This document shows, one piece after another, positions 18,516-55,095 of a DNA stretch of 64,000 nt (position 1 is the stretch's first letter; each line of letters starts with the position of its first letter). The DNA comes from Guillardia theta CCMP2712 (lineage: Eukaryota; Protista; Cryptophyta), in the NCBI RefSeq assembly GCF_000315625.1, contig NW_005434669.1, forward strand, positions 283,238 through 347,237. Reading direction: 5' to 3'. Below the pieces are notes generated by a model that was not told where the DNA came from, did not search any database, and saw only the letters and a list, made by a program, of their open reading frames with translations. The translations under genes were made by a program, and so were the position numbers.

Positions 18516-19901
18516 TTACTTTGAATCACGAAGAAATTCACGAACTTGAGCGACAAAGAACTTCTCTGCCGAAGCACTCTCGGGATCCTCCTGCTCGAAA
18601 ATCACATGTAGGTTGTAAGCGAGCGAGCGAGCGAGCGAGCGAGCGAGAAAGAGAGTGAGTGAGTGAGTGAGTGAGTGAGAGTGAGGGAGAGGGAGGGAGG
18701 GAGGGAGAGGGAGAGAGAGAGGGAGGGAGAGGGAGAGAGATGGAGAGGATGGGCAAAGATCGTTGAGAGAGAGGGCATCTCACAGGCAGCGGCGAGAGAG
18801 CATGGTTAGCGTTGGGGACGACGAGAGGGACGACCCTGCAGTCTCTCATTATCACATAGGAGACGACAATAAAGAACAAGCACCTTGCCTTCCCCCCCTC
18901 TCCTCTCATCGCCCTGGCGATTCTCTCCACGAGCTCCTGCCGCCGATCATTCACTATGAGAGCCCAGCAACGACATGGCTGACCTGCTTGTTCACCGTAG
19001 AAGGAACGTACTCATCCTTAGAAGAGTATGCTATCATGACGTCGGTGGTGCTGTAGAACCCCCCGAACCTCCTCGCGAGCTCGTCCTCGCTGAGATCCGA
19101 GGAGAAGTAGTCGTCCTTTCCTCCCACATCGTTGAGATCCAAGAACCTCTGTGCTGTGACTGGAGCCCAGCACGCGGATCGGGGCAGGAACTCGTCTCCT
19201 CCACCTGACTGCCTGGCAAGCTGCCTCGCCGCCTGTAAGTTCTCCTGCTGCTTCGCCAGAGCGTCCGCGTCCTCAAGCTCGCGGTCGCTGACACCGGCCT
19301 GGAGGATGATGTGCGAGATGTTGTGCTGTGGGAGGTTCTCCCTGCTGCGCATGTAGTGGCAGGCGATCTGACAGCCGGTGGAGTGACCGCAGATCGCAAA
19401 CTTCTTCCCCTCCCTCTCCCTTGCAAGGAAATCGAGCAGGGCAGACAAGTCCTCGACGTCTCTCTCCAGCGAGCCGAACCCCCACATGTTGTACGATGAT
19501 CGCAGGATAGGCTGCACCATGGACCATCCCTCTTCGCTCGCTGCCTGCCCGAGCGACGGGACGTACCAGCATGGTAGCAAGCCGTCGGAGAGCCCTCCTA
19601 TCATGATGAGCTTCTTCTCTGCATCGCCGGGCCCACTCTCGAAGGCCTGCAGCTGAGGAGCGTACTGGAACAGCGATCCCCTCATGCCGTCCTGCCGGGG
19701 GTCGCGGGCCGACATCACCGTCCTTGTCCTGGAATGCAGAAAATGAGACGAGCGCTGCAAGACTTGAGACGCAAATCTCGACAACCCCGCCAGGCTGCGC
19801 GCCATGAAAGCTTCACAGGGAGGAACAGGGAGGGCGAGGAGGAGGAGGATCAGGAGGAGGAGAGGGGCGTCGGCAGGGATTATGCCTGGTTTGCCTAGCA
19901 T
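18516..19901 (-). CDS. DUF1749 (UPF0613/SidJ-like) alpha/beta hydrolase with bipartite plastid-type presequence
   Basis: IGGLSDG, GFGSLERDVEDL, nucleophile elbow GHSTGCQ, ILQAGVSDRE, DDYFSSDL, DEYVP, NANHAL. Signal peptide ends CEA-F. Confidence 0.9.
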
Positions 19902-46723: not shown

Positions 46724-49700
46724 CTAGTGCGAGCCAGCAATAGGAAGCTTACGGTCGAAGTTGGATCCCCGAGCAGTGTCAAAGAGCGCTGGGTCCACTC
46801 CGATGGTTCCTTCGAGCTTCTTGAGATACTCGGCCGACTGTACATACGCGAGCTGGGCCTTGACGTGCTCGATCCTCTCGTTGAGCTTCAGCTCATCGCA
46901 GATCTGCTTGCCCTTCCAGTCGTCCTCCTTGCTGTTGGATGGTCCAGCCACGAAGTTCTCGAGATACTGGATGCCCCTCTGCAGTCTCTCGGCTTCACGT
47001 TGCTGGAAGCACTTGATCCTCTCCTGGTACCAAGGCGAGGACAAGATGGACTCTCTGGTGAAGAGCTTTCTGAACTCAGGGCTCTCCAGGGTCATTCCTT
47101 CGTACTCGCCCTTAGCCATGATGTGCAAAAGCGCCTTGAGAGGGGGCACTGCCATGTCGACACCACCGTCAGCCAAGTACATCTCAGCAACGCGCTTGTT
47201 CGTGACAGTGATGGTTCTGATACCATCCGCATAGATTTTCTCATCCTGCAATTCTGGCTTCAACATGTCCTCACTGAAGACAGAGGCTGGATCAGCAAAC
47301 ACACGGCCAAAGAACTGCTGGACAAACGACTTGGTGATACGATAACCCAAGACCGAGGACGGAACCTTCTCACCATTGAGGTTCATGTCAGGGATCTTCT
47401 CAAGATACCCATTCTTGATGAGCCAATTAGCGTCACGCTCCTCTTCCCTCATGCGACTCCAAACCTCTGGAACCAAGAGCGAGATGTCATGGTCAACCTG
47501 CTTCTGGGGACCAATCACTCCAGCAGAGGAAATGAAAACGTGAGTTTCAGTCAAAGCATATGCCAATAATGCAGCATTGAGGTCATGAATCTGGTTGAGC
47601 ATGTTGAAGGGGCCCTTGGTCAAAGCTCCCTCAGATCCAGCTCCTGTGGTGGAAGGCGACTTTCCAGTCATGGACGAAGCGAGCTCCATGAACAACTCTG
47701 GCAACTCATAGTAGTGGATGGGATTGTGAACGGCGAGCGCTGGAATTGAGCCCTCAGGGGGATTATTTCGACGTCCGCAGAGGACAGAGTTCACAGGAGT
47801 ATGGACCGCCTCTCCCATCGGAATTCCTCTGGCCAACCTGGTGGCCACGCTGCAGAGGTGGAATGCGCGCTGATCCGTGATCTCCATAGAATCTTGCAAA
47901 TATCTGGGATTCTTGGTTGGTTTTCCATCCACAATACGAGGATGGGCAGAAGATACAACATACGAGGAAGAGGAATCGAGGAAGGACAGAAGTCTATCCT
48001 GCATGGGCTCTGTGAATTTCTCGAATCCAATGGTTTCATCGACAATCTTCTGTACAGCTGCCTTGTCAAGCGGCTCAAAGTTGGAAATGAAGTTTCCAGG
48101 CTTGGACATATCTAGCTCCGTGATTTTATCATAACCTCTGTGAATGGCTTCATCTGGCCTCTGAAACAAGCGGAATTCGCAGTTCTGTGAAAACTTGTAG
48201 GAGGGCTTCTTCAGCCTGAAGTTCATGCCCTTTAGAGATGAGGAAGGAACGACAACAGATGCGGTGATGTCGTCTTCTGTCTGCAGCTTTTCACATGGAA
48301 AGAAGTCCTGCCTCAAAGTAAACGTCTTCCAGGCAACATTCTCGCTATCATCCTCAACGTGCTTCAAAGGAAGTTCCTTATCATGAACAGAACGGAAGCC
48401 AACACGGATGACTGCAGAAAGTAGTGGATCGCCTTTGTACTTGACCTCGTGGCCAAGCTCGCCATTGACAGCATCTGCATTGAAATGTACTCGCCAATTG
48501 GAACCCCATTCGGCTTTGTAGTTCTGTTTCACAACTTGAAGAAGCTCTCTGAGATACGATGGAATTCCGTTGATGAACTCCAAATGCTCTGCGGTGTAGT
48601 GAGGAGAATATGACAAGAGTTTGATGATGGTTCCAAGAGACACACGAGGGTCCAGAAGGGTCTTGATGGCACTTGGAGCAACACCAATGTGATCAAAAGG
48701 GTGCAATTTTTCATTGCCAGGCTTCATGATAGCAGAGTAGTCCTTGCTGAAAATCGATTGGAGAGCATCGAAGTCCTCAGACACATGATTTGTGAATACA
48801 GGACCATATTTAATCATGTCTTCCAATCTCTTGCTGATCTCTGACTTTCCTCCGCCAGAAACTGTTGCAGGTTTGTGAAGGTTTGCTCCTTCAGCAGTTG
48901 TTCCCCTTAGGTGCCATTTTTCGTAGGGTCCTGATTTTCCACCTCTCTTTCCCTTCACAACGTTTTGAGATCCCTTCTTCACCATCTCAACTTTGTATCC
49001 GCTCGGAAGAACGTAGGTGGTCCTTGGCTTCAAATTGATAGTCTGCTCCTTTCCATTGGAAGTCCATGTGATGCTTTGCTTGATCATGCTGAAAATAGCA
49101 TTCTCTGGAATGTAGTAGATATCGGGGTAATCCTTGTCGATGGCATATCCTTCGGGCTGAACTTCGACAGCATCCTTCAACAGCTTGGTTACGTCTTGGA
49201 AGGTCCTCTTGGTTGCAGTTTCAATCAAATACTTGTGCGTCTCGCCGAGGTACGCTGCATTGCCCCTGTCCGCAACCTGCGAATTGTAAGCGTTTCAATC
49301 TGATTTGTTTTCGACGGATTAAACCTTGCCAAGGCTACCAGCCGCAAATTCTTCTCCGAGATCGAATGAAGGGAATGCAATGCATCCTCCTAAATGATCT
49401 GGTCAGTCAAGCATCGAATGAACAAAGATTCCTGACCAGAGTGTTCTTCTTCCAACTGGCCGTACAAATTCGCAGCGTATCCTAACTGTGTCTTGACTTC
49501 TTTCTTGCAGTAACCGAAGTAGTTGTCGGCAATCAGCGTAACGACAACTCCTCGTGCATCACGAGCAGTCAACTTGAAAGCATTTCCTCCTATGGGATCA
49601 AAGCTCACGAAACATACATGAAAAGTAAGTTTTCATACCATTGTAGAGATCATCCTCTTTCTCCCAGAACATACCATCCTGAATTTGTCGCGGTGTAGCC

Positions 49701-51322
49701 TGTACGAGGTACCACAAAATTAAGAAAAAAGAATTTGAATCTTCGAAGCCAACCTGTGATTTATGCGGGAGATGAACATCTTTGGCTTTCAACTTTGTGA
49801 GATGTGGCACGAGCACAACCAAACCTGTTGTGCCAGTCCAGTGCCTAAATTGGAATCAGAATTCTACAAGATAGACCCAGGAACCAAAGATGGGACATAC
49901 TCAGGATCCAATGCCGCGTCGTTCTCAGCAAGATCAGGGTTGTCTCCATTGCCGAAAATTGACTCCACGAAATCGAGGTTGGCAACCATACTTGCTGGAA
50001 CAATGAAGCGCACCTAGCTCACTCTCAAACAAGAATTTACAGAAAGCAACCATTTACCTCGTGAGATTTCTCTTCAATGAAGCCTTGTACCTCGGGGCAG
50101 GCAAGAGGACGGAGTAGCAATGAGGCAAAGATCTTCGTCTTGTTTGGTTGATTGGCTGTATACGGGACCACCATGAGTTCCTCAGGAGGCCTCAAAGCAC
50201 TTTCTAGAATGGCCTTGAAAGTTTTCTTTGGTACGGCCTACGGTTGCCATCAGCGTCCTGAAGTCTCACTTTGTAACGGCTCACCTTTTTGTCACCCGAA
50301 ATAGGGAGTCCACCCTCGACAACATGGAAAACACCTTTGGTCGTTCGCTTGTCGCTCTTGGGATTGTGAACAACTCCTTGTGCAAGTCTGTATGAAGTGA
50401 TGTACTCGTTCTGGTAGATATCCTCCCCCTTTGGCAATGAGAGAATACGAGTCAAGCCATGGCGATCCAGTTTAAGCTGTCTGACAGGCAGTCTTGGCGA
50501 GCCACCTACGTCAGACAGGAAGTCATCCAGCCAGTCTTGAATACGCTGATCGGCTGGGCACAAGGACCTCCCTTGGTTGATGAGTACGTGCTGCTGCTCT
50601 TGATACGCTTTCAAAATGGGTTCTACAAGCCTCAGGAACCCTTCTTCCTTAGAGGACGATTCAACGGGAGCAGAGCCACAGGCGGCAAGCTTCAAGTTCA
50701 CGTAAGCGGTCATCAACGGATCCTTGGACAAGTCCTACGAGTCGGAGTCAGAAGGGAAGACTTTGTGATTGGAGACTCACATCATCTTGACCAGACTTCA
50801 TGTCGTTAGACACTCCGATTGAATGCATCTTCTTGCTCTTCATGGACTCTGGATCGGCACGCTGAGCATCAGTCTTCTTGGTTGGCGCATCAGAGTTCGC
50901 ATCGATGAAGCCTTGCGACATTACTCTCTGTTGAACGAGAGGAATAATCAGGGAAACGAATGTACTCACACCTCTACTAAATCTTCCTCCCTCCCTCCCA
51001 TACTTTTCTGGCACCACCTTTCTCTCTCCCCTCCTCTCTCTCCTCCTCTCAGGCGAGATCAGAGACGATACATGAACATTCCACCATGCAGAAAGGTGAG
51101 AGGATGGCTCACCGCAATGTTGAACGCGCCCTTGCGCTTCTGCGGAGCAGCAGGATGGCCGTAGGCGGCAACACCTTCGGTGATGTCTCCTCCACGCATA
51201 CGAAGCACATGTGGTTGAGAGAGACGGGAGGGAGTAGTGGATGCAGCAGCATCGAGGGCCATGCCCATCAACGCCACGAGCGCTGCTGCTGCTGCCGGGG
51301 AACAACGGAAGGATCCCTGCAT
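46724..51322 (-). CDS. PPi-dependent phosphoenolpyruvate carboxykinase (PEP carboxytransphosphorylase) with N-terminal signal + transit-like presequence
   Basis: YVNLKLAA, HNPKSDKRTTKGVFHV, IADNYFGYCKKEVKTQ, EEEHSG, HKPATVSGGGKSEISK, FRLFQRPDEAIHRGYDK, TGKSPSTTGAGSEGALTKGPFN, HDISLLVPEVW, GTIGVDP. Terminal exon of about 2.5 kb plus several 5' exons. Confidence 0.92.
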
Positions 51323-52775
51323 TGCGGCGGAAGCGACAAGGCGGAGGCGGACAGTGGTTTTGGGGATGTAGAGATCGACAGGCTCGGGGTGGGGTGGGAT
51401 TCGAGTCTGGGATTCGAGTCTGGGTAGGGTCGTATCACGGATAAGTTAGAGGTGGGGTACTCAAGGCTCTCCCTGGGAAACAATGGGGTGGTGCCATTAT
51501 TACCTATCGTATCTGAGATTGAAGAGCAAACGGGGTAGGGGTTATTCATCTTGAGTGGGTGGGGTGTATCTGAATTTCAGGGCGCAGCTGCGAGCACCGG
51601 TACAAATAGAGGGATGAATAGGGTGAATCAAGGAAGGGTACACCTCTGTATCCAGTTCAAAGGGGTTGTGGGGTTGTGGGTGTCTCAGGGAGAGATCCAA
51701 GACTATAGCTTCTGATATTAGAGCAGTATACGATAATAAAGTGATGTAGACCCTATATCAATTACCCCCTTTTTAGGACAAGTTCCAGGGGGGTGGGGGT
51801 CAACAAGTATTATCAAGTCGACCACGATTTAGTGCGACTGGCTGGCTGTAAAGGAAATTGAACTATCAGATGGGGTAGGGTGGGGTAAACTATGATTTAT
51901 TGAAGGGCATATTTACTCAATCACAATTATTTCCTTTATTCAATTTGAATATTTCAAGGAAAATGTTCAATAAATCGAAATATTATGGCAACGCGTCTGC
52001 AATGACGTGGGGTCCATCAGACGGAGGTGGATCTACCAGGGGGTAGGAATTGAGCAGGACGATGTGTGGGGTGGGGTGTGGGTCATTTTTTCTGGAGGCA
52101 GGGGTGGGTAGAAGGTATAGTCAGCACCAAGGGTCGCATTGTTGGGGTGCAAGAGGATAAATTACCACATAGGGATTCCTGGATCCGGAAAAGCTCAGAG
52201 CGGGAGGGAACAAACAAAGTAAGACGGAGGTAAAACAAAACCATCTGGTCTTATTTTCAAAATCTTATGAGAGAATTTCGCAGAGTTCAGTAGTCCATCT
52301 CAAGTACACCATGTATGATACAACCCTCCTGGAAATATGAAACAACACATCATCCCTACCCCCAGATATTCGCAAGACTCTGGCCACCCCTGTTGTGAGA
52401 GGATAAAAAAATCACCCACGGCTACAACCCCCTTCTGCAGACCTGGTAGTATTTAAAAAGGTTTTAAGTAATTGGTACATAATCGATGGGAAAATAGTAG
52501 TGATTTAAATCACATGAAATAAAATAATCATTTTTAAATTATATAAGTTCATACAATCATGAGTATTATTTATATCATGGGTATTAATTATATAAGAATA
52601 ACTATATGAATTTTAAACATGTTCACAGATAGGGATACGTATCAGTACTGAGGCGCCAACAAACAGTACTATTGAGATTTCTTTAAGTACAGATATGAAA
52701 AGTACGAGCTCCGCCAGTACCAATTTTTATAATTTACTTTTTGTAACTGGAATCCCCTACTACGACCAGTCAGGG

Positions 52776-55095
52776 ATGTCCGCAAGCGCTACAGTCATGG
52801 CGGCCATGGCGCGCGCTTGCCTCCTGCTCGTGCTCGGCATGCAGATGGTGCATGCAGGGTCCATGTGGTCCAAGGTAGAGATGGCTCCTCCTGACCCTAT
52901 CCTCGGGGTGGCTGTGGAATACAACAAGGATCCATCCCCGAAGAAAGTGAACTTGGGGATCGGGGCGTACAGAGACGACAATGGGAAGCCTCTTGTGCTA
53001 AAGTGTGTGAGGGAGGCTGAGAGGAAGATTGCGAATGATGAGAGCATGAACAAGGAGTACTTGCCCATTCAGGTGCATTGGAGATCTGATCCTTGCTTGC
53101 CTGCTGACATCGGATTTCTCTTGCAACCCTGTTTCTACTGTAGGGGCTCGAGAGTTTCCTGTCTCAGACCTCCAAGATCATCTTTGGCGATGAATCGCCT
53201 GCGATCAAGGAACAGAGGGTGGCGGTGGTACAGAGTCTCTCGGGGACAGGTACTCCCTGCGAGCGGGTCGCTGGTCGCCTGATGGATGAATGACAGGCGC
53301 ATTGCGACTGGCTGCTGAGTTCATCGCTCTGTACTATCCTACAGCGACCGCATACATCAGGCATGGCGCATAGATGGAGCCGATGATGATGTGTGACGGC
53401 ATGTTGCAGTGACCCTTCGTGGGGAAACCATCACACCATCTTCAAGAAAGCGGGTCTACAGGTGAGTTGCCCTCGACTTCAGTCACAGAGGTTTGACCCG
53501 AGGGGTTTCAGACAAAGACGTACAAGTATCTGAGCCCAGACATGAGTCTTGACTTTGATGGGATGAAGTCGGACGTGCAAGCTGCACCCAAGGTTTCAAC
53601 TTGCGCGCATGATGTTGGTGTCTGCGTGTTGACATGTCGCTCAAGGGCTCGATCTTCATCTTCCACACCATTGCCCACAACCCGACGGGTGTCGATCTTT
53701 CGCATGATCAGTGGAAGGAAATTGCCAAGGTGCCGATGACTCCATCTGCCTTTCCATCGCCTGACACTTGAACAATAAGGTTTGCCAGGAGAAGGAACAT
53801 ATCATCATCTTCGACACAGCTTATCAGGTACGTCTGGTTGCACACGTGAACGTCTGACGCCCGATTTCGAGTGATTTTTGCTGAATGCTTCTTGTCTTGT
53901 CTCTAGGGCTATGCTACTGGAGATCTCGAGAGCGACGCGTGGGCCGTGAAGTACTTTGCTCATGAGATGAAGATGGAACTCTTCGTGACCCAGTGAGTGC
54001 TGACGTTTTCTGCGACCTCCCTCATCCACGTCGCTCGGGTGAGTTCTTGGGCAGATCATACTCTAAGAACTTCGGACTGTACGGAGAGAGAATCGGTGCC
54101 CTCAACGTTCTTTGCAACGACGCTGAAACGGCCGTCAAGGTACTACCACACCTTGAGCAGCGAACATGGTGTGGTTTGACTCTTCCTTTGAGGCATGACC
54201 TGGTTCAACAGGTCCAGTCACAACTCAAAGGAGTGATTCGACCGATGTATTCCAGTCCGCAGGTCATCTCTATAGCAAACCCTGCCTGCATGACTGATGG
54301 CGGTTGCAGCTCCATGGCGCAAGGCTTGTCTCGACCGTTCTCTCGGATAACAAGGTGAAATGGGAGGAGGTTGCAACTAGATCTACTAGAGTGACACAGT
54401 CAACAGCTCAAGGACCTATGGAAAGTTGAGCTCAAGCAGATGTCGCAGAGAATCACTGAGATGCGATCTGTAATGATCCTCGCTCCCTCCCTCTTCCTTC
54501 TTTCCTCTTCCCTCCCTTGCATCCTTGCTTCCATCCCACCTAGTGCTCTTCCACTCGCTCCCGTCCTCTCTCCTAACATCTCCCCTACATGGTTGCGGGC
54601 TACTGACTATCAATAGGCTCTTGTCCGAGAGTTGACGGCATGCCAATGTCCGTTCCCCAACGAGAAGTTCTCGAGCTGGAACCACATCGTCAAACAGGTG
54701 GGCAGCAGCTGGACATAACGAGTGGATTGGTTGATACTCAAACATCATGCTTATCTCTCCACTTAGATTGGAATGTTCGCCTACACGGGGCTCAGTGCGC
54801 AGCAGTGCGCTGTTCTGACACAAGAGCATCACATCTACTGTACATAACGATCTCTGTTCTTCCACCTCTCATTCTCAACCTCGCAGGTACCAAGAACGGG
54901 CGGTTCTCCATGGCAGGAGTCAACCCAGGTCTGTCCTGAGCATTGCACAGTTGTCCAACTTTGCTGCCTCACTGTCATGGAAACGACCTCTACCATTTAC
55001 TCGCTGTTTTGTTAAAGTTTCTACTGATACATGGATTAGGAAACGTCAAGTACATCGCGGAGAGCATGAAGCATGCCATCGAGTCTTGCAAGTGA
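52776..55095 (+). CDS. Aspartate aminotransferase (class Ia) with N-terminal signal peptide, more than 10 short introns
   Basis: [66 protein letters not shown]-lysine motif [25 protein letters not shown]. Confidence 0.96.

What the first reader, a model, noticed from the sequence alone, without database searches (positions are those of the whole stretch)
51188..51322. PPi-PEPCK presequence ends in a ubiquitin C-terminus mimic (LRMRGG)
Seen: MQGSFRCSPAAAAALVALMGMALDAAA|STTPSRLSQPHVLRMRGG|DITEG. This is a signal peptide, a non-Phe residue at the likely cleavage site, a short S/T/R-rich stretch, then LRMRGG (ubiquitin ends HLVLRLRGG; this reads PHVLRMRGG). Known: in red-complex plastids, Phe at +1 marks stromal import and non-aromatic residues mark periplastid residents; SELMA import uses ubiquitin machinery. 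RGG-ending transit peptides have, to my recollection, been noted in such algae. Inference: the transit peptide is removed by a deubiquitinase-like protease, leaving a periplastid PPi-PEPCK, an unusual location for an enzyme known as cytosolic.
Basis: partly seen in the sequence, partly recalled or inferred. Interest (0 to 1): 0.72.

Follow-up and report, generated by a model that had tools for sequence, protein, structure and literature searches.

The report
Ubiquitin-tail motif ends periplastid PPi-PEPCK leader
The only PPi-dependent PEP carboxykinase gene of the alga Guillardia theta starts with a transcribed, conserved targeting leader ending in LRMRGG, and this ubiquitin-tail-like ending proves to be the usual, apparently undescribed end-mark of proteins sent to the periplastid compartment.

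Summary
On the minus strand, 51322-51188 encodes M1-G45: a hydrophobic signal peptide, an 18-residue basic, hydroxyl-rich linker, then LRMRGG.

- **Transcription:** exon 1 is joined to exon 2 in transcript assemblies from three studies.
- **Gene:** it is single copy and encodes a PPi-PEPCK. The NCBI model lacks exons 1 and 2.
- **Conservation:** all 7 cryptophyte orthologues have a signal peptide, 13-18 residues, then R[LMI]RGG.
- **Generality:** a [LMIV]RGG ending also closes the leaders of:
  - 5 of 5 G. theta periplastid proteins tested with GFP in a published set;
  - periplastid Cdc48;
  - three G. theta starch synthases, and 12 of 12 full-length cryptophyte starch synthase homologues;
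  - a starch phosphorylase, a phosphofructokinase, an FBPase paralogue and a thioredoxin.
- **Control:** about 60 cryptophyte plastid leaders that start with an aromatic residue lack it at the leader end.

PPi-PEPCK is therefore very probably periplastid, next to starch and sugar-phosphate enzymes. In periplastid EF-1alpha the motif abuts the canonical mature N-terminus, so it likely marks the cut site.

Cleavage by a deubiquitinase-like protease is plausible but unproven. No ubiquitin fold precedes the motif, and ptDUP is reported absent from cryptophytes. I found no paper describing the motif. This scan had already noted it elsewhere in this genome.

The parts
51323..51344 (-). minimum 5' UTR
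   Evidence: Transcript contigs of X1 and X2 extend to 51344 and 51337. There is no upstream ATG in this stretch.
51242..51322 (-). signal peptide, M1-A27 (n-region MQGSFR, uncharged hydrophobic core, c-region DAAA)
   Evidence: Translation; hydrophobic-core scan; the same architecture in 7 orthologues.
51206..51241 (-). short transit-peptide-like linker S28-V39, rich in Ser/Thr/Pro, basic, with no acidic residue
   Evidence: The linker is 13-18 residues long and variable in orthologues.
51188..51205 (-). LRMRGG, the ubiquitin-tail-like leader end (ubiquitin ends LRLRGG)
   Evidence: pattern hit C5:334426-334442. RxRGG is invariant in orthologues.
51113..51187 (-). rest of exon 1, D46-A70: acidic start, then the conserved island KRxxAFxIA(R)
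   Evidence: G55, R63, A66, F67, I69, A70 invariant.
50928..51112 (-). intron 1 (GT..AG, 185 nt)
   Evidence: Joint 50927|51113 in contigs of three runs, with zero depth inside.
50781..50927 (-). exon 2: cryptophyte-specific N-terminal extension with the conserved island KK[LM]xxIG
50285..50734 (-). exon 3: homology to bacterial PPi-PEPCK begins here (DPLMTAYVNLKLAA)
   Evidence: Alignment with bacterial homologues; joints.
50058..50237 (-). exon 4
   Evidence: Joints; reading frame.
49901..50013 (-). exon 5
   Evidence: Joints; reading frame.
49754..49844 (-). exon 6
   Evidence: Joints; reading frame.
49639..49699 (-). exon 7
   Evidence: Joints; reading frame.
49437..49589 (-). exon 8
   Evidence: Joints; reading frame.
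49325..49389 (-). exon 9 (missing from the NCBI model P0001)
   Evidence: Joints; present in orthologues.
46724..49276 (-). exon 10 with stop: the main catalytic part of PPi-PEPCK
   Evidence: PDB 8e1u E=1.6e-198 and 6k31 E=8e-189; homologues carry PF26300.

Best explanation
Exon 1 of the single-copy Guillardia theta PPi-PEPCK gene encodes a periplastid-type bipartite leader. A signal peptide takes the protein into the ER lumen that surrounds the plastid. A short basic linker with no aromatic first residue carries it across the periplastid membrane but not into the stroma. The linker ends in LRMRGG, one instance of a [LMIV]RGG end-mark (often LR[LM]RGG) shared by periplastid-compartment proteins of cryptophytes. 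The motif most likely marks where the leader is removed inside the periplastid compartment. That would leave an enzyme starting near DITEG, with a roughly 74-residue cryptophyte-specific extension ahead of the bacterial-type PPi-PEPCK body. Shown here: the sequence, its transcription, its conservation, and the link between the motif and periplastid proteins. Inferred: the location of this particular enzyme, cleavage at the motif, and the protease. I favour a cysteine protease that reads a ubiquitin-like tail, but only weakly.
For: - **Peptide and transcripts:** the peptide and its coordinates are confirmed. Nine GT..AG joints, including exon 1 to exon 2, occur in transcript contigs from three studies.
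- **Gene identity:** PPi-PEPCK, single copy in the genome.
- **Conservation:** 7 of 7 cryptophyte orthologues have a signal peptide, 13-18 residues, then R[LMI]RGG.
- **Paralogous leaders:** a leader profile finds two more genes in the same genome. One is a starch phosphorylase (NNLRLRGG) and one a phosphofructokinase (HNVLRMRGG). Their codons differ from those of PEPCK, so the peptide itself is under selection.
- **Starch synthases:** two G. theta genes run in one open frame from signal peptide through LNLRGG or LSLRGG into the GT5 domain. A third, gt_164385, has SLRGG. 12 of 12 cryptophyte-like homologues with an intact N-terminus have [LMIV]RGG at residues 39-60, and none of about 75 non-cryptophyte hits has it in a leader. 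Starch synthesis takes place in the cryptophyte periplastid compartment (PMC4494062).
- **Published periplastid set (ASAFind 2.0, Appendix S3):** EF-1alpha, 14-3-3, RRM1, CyP and Ubc8, all GFP-tested, plus Cdc48, all end their leaders in [LP]RGG-type motifs. In EF-1alpha, LRLRGG abuts the canonical GKEK N-terminus.
- **Published plastid set (Appendix S9, parts 1-3):** about 60 aromatic-type leaders have no such leader end. The non-aromatic FBPase paralogue and thioredoxin have LRLRGG.
- **Genome-wide count:** the LR-Phi-RGG coding pattern occurs 618 times against 389 for the reversed peptide, roughly two-fold after removing Ser and Phe codons by eye.
Against: - No localisation or N-terminal data exist for this protein.
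- The signal peptide and its cleavage site were judged by rule of thumb, not by SignalP or ASAFind.
- The transit-like part is very short (18 residues), though RRM1 and the FBPase paralogue have 16.
- Deubiquitinases normally need the ubiquitin fold, which is absent here.
- ptDUP is reported absent from cryptophytes.
- The GFP tests of G. theta leaders were done in a diatom, not in G. theta.
- Parts 4-5 of Appendix S9 were not read.
Confidence: 0.6

Rival explanations
1. The motif is a cleavage site, but for a protease unrelated to deubiquitinases. An example would be an M16 (MPP/SPP-like) presequence peptidase that reads Arg at position -2 or -3. In that case the likeness to ubiquitin's tail is convergent or coincidental.
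For: Arg at -2 or -3 is the classic determinant of mitochondrial presequence cleavage (established knowledge). The variants RLKGG, LRLKGG and RLYGG occur in starch synthases and nucleotide transporters, so the motif is looser than a strict ubiquitin tail. No ubiquitin fold precedes it.
Against: The extended consensus L-x-Phi-R-G-G, often exactly LRLRGG, matches ubiquitin at up to six positions. That is more than an R-2 or R-3 rule needs. The periplastid compartment must already hold an enzyme that cuts after RGG, because its ubiquitin precursor gt_155024 needs such processing.
Confidence: 0.2
2. The motif is not cut. It acts as a sorting or retention signal, for example a ubiquitin-tail mimic read by SELMA, Cdc48 cofactors or a receptor that keeps the protein in the periplastid compartment.
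For: The motif is tightly linked with periplastid rather than stromal destination. In the PEPCK leader the two Arg of the motif supply most of the positive charge of the 18-residue linker.
Against: The motif always sits at the border between a variable basic leader and an acidic or conserved mature part. In EF-1alpha it directly abuts the ancestral N-terminus. Its distance from the signal peptide varies from 13 to about 60 residues, which is typical of a boundary mark.
Confidence: 0.12
3. The leader sends PPi-PEPCK somewhere else (ER lumen or secretion, or the stroma), or an alternative start at M73 in exon 2 makes a cytosolic enzyme the main form.
For: No experimental localisation exists. Exon 2 has an in-frame ATG. 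One database orthologue (P0011) starts at the equivalent Met.
Against: P0141, in the same 90% cluster as P0011, carries the full leader. The internal Met is Leu or Ser in most orthologues. Only the exon 1-containing form was assembled, and there is no depth in intron 1. ER and secreted G. theta proteins in the published set lack the motif, and stromal leaders start with an aromatic residue and lack it.
Confidence: 0.08

Closest known systems
Bipartite targeting sequences of periplastid-compartment proteins in cryptophytes and diatoms (signal peptide plus transit-like peptide without an aromatic first residue; Gould et al. 2006 as cited in PMC4494062 and PMC12136025)
   Same: There is a signal peptide, a basic hydroxyl-rich acid-free linker, and a non-aromatic residue after the predicted signal cleavage. 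The leader end is the same as in the GFP-tested G. theta periplastid proteins.
   Different: The published rule concerns only the first residue of the transit-like part. The conserved [LMIV]RGG end is not mentioned in the papers I could search.
Ubiquitin and ubiquitin-like precursor tails (LRLRGG) cut by deubiquitinases; LXGG sites of viral papain-like proteases
   Same: LRMRGG matches ubiquitin's last six residues at five positions, and other periplastid leaders match at six.
   Different: No beta-grasp fold lies upstream, only a signal peptide and 12 further residues. The leaving group is a 1,300-residue enzyme. Cleavage has not been shown.
Toxoplasma PUBL, the plastid ubiquitin-like protein with an RGG ahead of its ubiquitin-like domain (PMC5487736)
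   Same: An RGG lies between an apicoplast-directed presequence and the functional domain, in a SELMA-bearing lineage.
   Different: In PUBL the N-terminal RGG is dispensable and seems not to be processed, and the protein itself is a ubiquitin relative. Here the motif sits on unrelated metabolic enzymes.
PPi-PEPCK of Propionibacterium freudenreichii (PDB 8e1u), Actinomyces israelii (6k31) and Entamoeba
   Same: The protein is homologous from exon 3 to the end (E about 1e-198) and belongs to family PF26300.
   Different: The cryptophyte enzyme carries a 119-residue N-terminal addition (a 45-residue leader plus a 74-residue extension) and is predicted to work in the periplastid compartment rather than the cytosol.
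PEPC1 in the periplastid compartment of Thalassiosira pseudonana (listed in the ASAFind 2.0 periplastid set)
   Same: It is an enzyme that interconverts PEP and oxaloacetate, placed between the plastid membrane pairs of a red-derived complex plastid.
   Different: It belongs to a different enzyme family, uses a different energy coupling (no PPi) and occurs in a different lineage.

Membership tests
PPi-dependent PEPCK (PF26300; PDB 8e1u, 6k31) | Full-length sequence homology to characterised PPi-PEPCKs | tested here: met
   Exon 10 matches 8e1u residues 369-1129 at E=1.6e-198. Exon 3 aligns with bacterial N-termini. Homologues are annotated PF26300 or as diphosphate PEPCK.
PPi-dependent PEPCK (PF26300; PDB 8e1u, 6k31) | Use of PPi as phosphoryl donor or acceptor | not testable with these tools
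   This needs an enzyme assay.
Periplastid-type bipartite targeting sequence | N-terminal signal peptide | tested here: met
   A hydrophobic core scores 2.45 on Kyte-Doolittle over 10 residues with no charge, preceded by R6 and followed by the DAAA c-region. The same holds in 7 orthologues. SignalP was not available.
Periplastid-type bipartite targeting sequence | Transit-like region that is basic, hydroxyl-rich and acid-free, with a non-aromatic, non-Leu first residue | tested here: met
   The region reads STTPSRLSQPHVLRMRGG: three Arg, no Asp or Glu, first residue Ser or Ala. The result depends on a predicted, not measured, signal cleavage site.
Periplastid-type bipartite targeting sequence | Experimentally shown periplastid location | not testable with these tools
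   This needs GFP or immunogold work.
[LMIV]RGG-ended periplastid leaders (a class seen in this scan and in published sequence sets) | The motif lies 10-60 residues after the signal peptide, at the switch from a basic leader to an acidic or conserved mature part | tested here: met
   In PEPCK the motif is at residues 40-45 and is followed by DITEG. The layout is the same in EF-1alpha, 14-3-3, RRM1, CyP, Ubc8 and Cdc48 and in starch synthases.
[LMIV]RGG-ended periplastid leaders (a class seen in this scan and in published sequence sets) | Absence from stromal (aromatic-type) leaders | tested here: met
   Of about 60 aromatic-type cryptophyte plastid leaders, none ends this way. One VRGG lies in the conserved mature part of chlorophyll synthase.
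Ubiquitin-like precursors processed by deubiquitinases | C-terminal tail of LRLRGG type | tested here: met
   LRMRGG.
Ubiquitin-like precursors processed by deubiquitinases | Beta-grasp ubiquitin fold upstream of the tail | tested here: not met
   Only 39 residues precede the motif, and 27 of them are the signal peptide. Pfam finds nothing in exon 1.
Ubiquitin-like precursors processed by deubiquitinases | Hydrolysis after GG by a cysteine deubiquitinase | not testable with these tools
   No candidate protease sequence could be fetched. ptDUP is reported absent from cryptophytes.

The most novel reading that the evidence does not exclude
Cryptophytes, and to some degree diatoms, end the leaders of periplastid-resident proteins with a copy of ubiquitin's tail. 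A periplastid deubiquitinase-type protease, part of or alongside the ubiquitin-driven SELMA import machine, would then trim the leader after GG. Leader removal and the ubiquitin system of the remnant cytoplasm would be one mechanism. PPi-PEPCK would be one client, working with periplastid PFK, FBPase and starch enzymes in a PPi-linked carbon shunt beside the plastid.
Probability: 0.3. Interest if true: 0.85.

Novelty: new variant of a known kind. Interest (0 to 1): 0.7.

Why it matters
How periplastid-resident proteins are told apart from stromal ones, and how their leaders are removed, is only partly understood. The single accepted rule concerns the first residue after the signal peptide, and no periplastid leader peptidase is known.

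A conserved leader-end motif would sharpen prediction of periplastid proteomes. It would give a concrete, mutable cleavage or sorting site to test, and it would point to the protease class to look for.

For metabolism, it places a PPi-dependent enzyme that interconverts PEP and oxaloacetate in the remnant cytoplasm, together with PFK, FBPase, starch phosphorylase and starch synthases. PPi-PEPCK was known as a cytosolic enzyme in Entamoeba and bacteria. This suggests the compartment runs more central carbon metabolism than starch storage alone.

Tried and rejected
- **Random genome sample:** 200 kb plus the window held too few real genes, and [LMIV]RGG was not separable from permuted controls.
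- **Family scans:** the local Pfam and NCBIfam scans gave no family for the PEPCK exon. Identity came from PDB and homologue searches instead.
- **Missing supplements:** PMC4494062, with its aminoacyl-tRNA synthetase localisation table, has no supplements on hand.
- **Literature:** searches for the motif found nothing relevant except Toxoplasma PUBL.
- **A form without signal peptide (P0011):** rejected, because cluster mate P0141 carries the leader.
- **Alternative start at M73:** not conserved.
- **ptDUP as the protease:** reported absent from cryptophytes.
- **Second LRMRGG-coding site in the window (54862-54878, minus strand):** it lies in a 39-codon frame with no signal peptide, so it is probably chance.
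- **Complex prediction and structure prediction:** not run, because no candidate protease sequence was on hand and the leader is too short for a meaningful fold.
- **Spliced protein:** the joined model was never sent to a search tool. Exons were searched separately by reference.

Full report
**What is there**

The window is nuclear DNA of Guillardia theta CCMP2712. The best protein hit to the large exon is GUITHDRAFT_84236 at 98% identity, and the window maps to contig C5:283238-347237 of its assembly.

The stated span 51188-51322 is codons 1-45, and LRMRGG is encoded by 51188-51205.

**Gene model and transcription**

Reading the minus strand, I derived ten exons:

| Exon | Coordinates |
|---|---|
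| 1 | 51322-51113 |
| 2 | 50927-50781 |
| 3 | 50734-50285 |
| 4 | 50237-50058 |
| 5 | 50013-49901 |
| 6 | 49844-49754 |
| 7 | 49699-49639 |
| 8 | 49589-49437 |
| 9 | 49389-49325 |
| 10 | 49276-46724 |

- Spliced contigs from three runs of three different studies carry all nine joints at exactly these places. All are GT..AG on the coding strand, and they include exon 1 to exon 2.
- The contigs start 22 and 15 nt upstream of the ATG at 51322, with no earlier ATG, and intron 1 has no depth.
- These runs are kept as contigs, so rare isoforms cannot be excluded.
- The NCBI protein model (P0001, 1177 aa) starts inside exon 3 and skips exon 9, which is why the leader is not in the public annotation.
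- The joined protein was not submitted to any search tool. Exons were searched separately by reference.

**Identity of the enzyme**

- Exon 10 matches the solved PPi-PEPCKs 8e1u and 6k31 at E about 1e-198. Thousands of homologues carry PF26300 or the name diphosphate PEPCK.
- Homology to the bacterial enzymes begins at the start of exon 3. Exons 1 and 2 (119 residues) are therefore a cryptophyte-specific addition.
- The gene is single copy in the assembly.
- After a dozen cryptophyte-type sequences, the nearest relatives are bacterial (48-51% identity, several labelled Verrucomicrobiota). This hints at a bacterial origin, but I did not build a tree.

**Conservation of the leader**

- Five full-length cryptophyte orthologues from transcriptomes, one of them Rhodomonas abbreviata, all show a hydrophobic N-terminus, 13-18 variable residues, then R[LMI]RGG.
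- R41, R43, G44 and G45 are invariant in the alignment while the residues before them are not.
- A sixth lineage seemed to lack the leader (P0011). A member of the same 90% cluster, P0141, reads signal peptide plus SLLRMRGG, so P0011 is only a shorter ORF call.
- After the motif the sequences turn acidic, then share two small islands, KRxxAFxIAR and KK[LM]xxIG[YV]. Their role is unknown.

**Is the motif general, and what does it mark?**

*Leader profile.* A profile of the PEPCK leaders searched against the genome found two further genes.
- One continues into carbohydrate phosphorylase exons (PF00343). Its leader ends NNLRLRGG.
- The other continues into phosphofructokinase exons (PF00365, closest to ATP-dependent types). 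Its leader ends HNVLRMRGG.
- That each leader exon belongs to the downstream exons is inferred from position and strand, not from RNA.
- The codons differ from those of PEPCK, so the peptide, not a copied DNA piece, is conserved.

*Starch synthases.*
- Cryptophytes make starch in the periplastid compartment (stated in PMC4494062), so I looked at the G. theta starch synthases.
- Two genes run in one open frame from signal peptide through TLNLRGG or RLSLRGG into the GT5 domain.
- Among homologues of one of them, all 12 cryptophyte-like proteins with an intact hydrophobic N-terminus have [LMIV]RGG at residues 39-60. Several N-terminally truncated ones start just before it.
- The variants RLKGG and RLYGG occur.
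- None of about 75 non-cryptophyte hits has the motif in a leader.

*Published periplastid set.* The supplements of ASAFind 2.0 (PMC12136025) hold full sequences of a periplastid set and a cryptophyte plastid set.
- The five G. theta proteins localised by GFP in Phaeodactylum all carry the motif at the leader end. EF-1alpha, 14-3-3, RRM1 and CyP have LRLRGG, and Ubc8 has PLRGG.
- Periplastid Cdc48 (MRLRGG) and a third starch synthase (SLRGG) carry it too.
- In EF-1alpha the motif directly precedes GKEKHH..VIGHVDSGKST, the canonical N-terminus of the mature factor. This is the strongest sequence evidence that the motif marks the leader/mature border.

*Published plastid set.* I read parts 1-3 of 5.
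- About 60 leaders that start with Phe, Tyr or Trp have no such end. The one VRGG lies in the conserved mature part of chlorophyll synthase.
- The non-aromatic FBPase paralogue and a thioredoxin have LRLRGG.
- Two nucleotide transporters whose transit part starts with Leu have LR[LM]KGG.

*Other evidence.*
- Some Thalassiosira periplastid proteins also end their leaders this way: TrxH SLRGG, Der1-1 DLRGG and sSec14 QIRGG.
- Genome-wide, the coding pattern for [LF][RS]-Phi-[RS]GG occurs 618 times against 389 for the reversed peptide. Among the first 50 rows of each list, about 80% and 62% encode true Arg, which gives roughly a two-fold excess. This is a rough count made by eye.
- A random 264-kb sample was too small to add anything.

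**Mechanism**

*Shown:* the motif is real, transcribed and conserved. It is linked to periplastid and not stromal leaders, and it sits at the leader/mature border.

*Inferred:*
- PPi-PEPCK is imported into the periplastid compartment.
- The leader is removed at or next to GG.
- The periplastid compartment must contain an activity that cuts after RGG. Its own ubiquitin precursor (gt_155024) has a ubiquitin-like domain ending RVRGG fused to ubiquitin, which ends LRLRGG followed by two extra residues.

That makes a deubiquitinase-type protease a reasonable candidate, but there are three objections:
- Such enzymes usually need the ubiquitin fold, which the leader lacks.
- The SELMA deubiquitinase ptDUP is reported absent from cryptophytes, and the authors suggest an alternative enzyme (PMC12412216).
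- The K and Y variants loosen the match to ubiquitin.

A metallopeptidase reading Arg at -2 or -3, or an uncleaved sorting signal, remain open.

**Comparison with what is known, and novelty**

- Bipartite leaders and the aromatic-residue rule are established.
- A conserved ubiquitin-tail-like leader end is not mentioned in any paper I could search. Neither 'RGG' nor 'glycine' occurs in the main text of ASAFind 2.0. The only paper found that combines RGG with 'periplastid' and 'cryptophyte' concerns Toxoplasma PUBL, where the N-terminal RGG is dispensable. Further searches found nothing.
- Subscription papers (Gould et al. 2006, Curtis et al. 2012) were not searchable, so prior description cannot be excluded.
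- This scan has already flagged the same motif on other pieces of this genome. One earlier follow-up (s1-431663) reached the same general conclusion. I re-derived it here from independent look-ups.
- For PPi-PEPCK itself, no paper in the library links it with cryptophytes.

**Verdict**

The periplastid reading is well supported by indirect evidence, and the deubiquitinase step is unproven.

Noticed in passing
L004 (G000:C5:46384-49455), minus strand, ATG at locus 1680; PFK exons at 202-1003: A phosphofructokinase gene (PF00365, closest to ATP-dependent types) seems to carry a periplastid-type leader ending HNVLRMRGG. That would imply glycolytic steps in the periplastid compartment. The link between leader exon and PFK exons rests on position only.
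   Followed up: partly
L002 (G000:C1:1198484-1201645), minus strand, ATG at locus 1668; phosphorylase exons at 148-1171: An alpha-glucan (starch) phosphorylase gene (PF00343) has a leader ending NNLRLRGG.
   Followed up: partly
window 46724-51322, minus strand, compared with protein P0001: The public model GUITHDRAFT_84236 lacks exons 1 and 2 and exon 9. It also drops 16 residues inside exon 10 that orthologues keep. Transcript joints support the longer model.
   Followed up: yes
window 18957-19901, minus strand: A DUF1749 alpha/beta-hydrolase ORF has a classic aromatic-type plastid leader (signal peptide, then Phe after ..PPCEA) and no RGG end. It serves as a local contrast to the PEPCK leader.
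   Followed up: partly
window 54862-54878, minus strand: A second LRMRGG-coding stretch lies in a 39-codon frame with no signal peptide or known domain. It looks like a chance match.
   Followed up: partly
ASAFind 2.0 Appendix S3 (PMC12136025), Thalassiosira rows: Several diatom periplastid proteins (TrxH, Der1-1, sSec14; weaker in two Cdc48 copies) also end their leaders in xRGG followed by an acidic or Ser-rich stretch. The motif may therefore predate the cryptophyte/diatom split of the import system, or have arisen twice.
   Followed up: partly
ASAFind 2.0 Appendix S9, XP_005823901.1 and KAJ1484853.1: Cryptophyte nucleotide transporter homologues have leaders starting with Leu and ending LRLKGG or LRMKGG, a Lys variant of the motif on membrane proteins.
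   Followed up: no
window 51350-52150: The region upstream of the PEPCK start is full of short G-rich words (GGGGTGGGG, GGGTAGGG and similar) on the plus strand. Their function is unknown.
   Followed up: no
homologue list: Beyond cryptophyte-type sequences, the nearest PPi-PEPCK relatives are bacterial (48-51% identity, several labelled Verrucomicrobiota). This suggests the cryptophyte gene was acquired from bacteria and gained its leader later. No tree was built.
   Followed up: no
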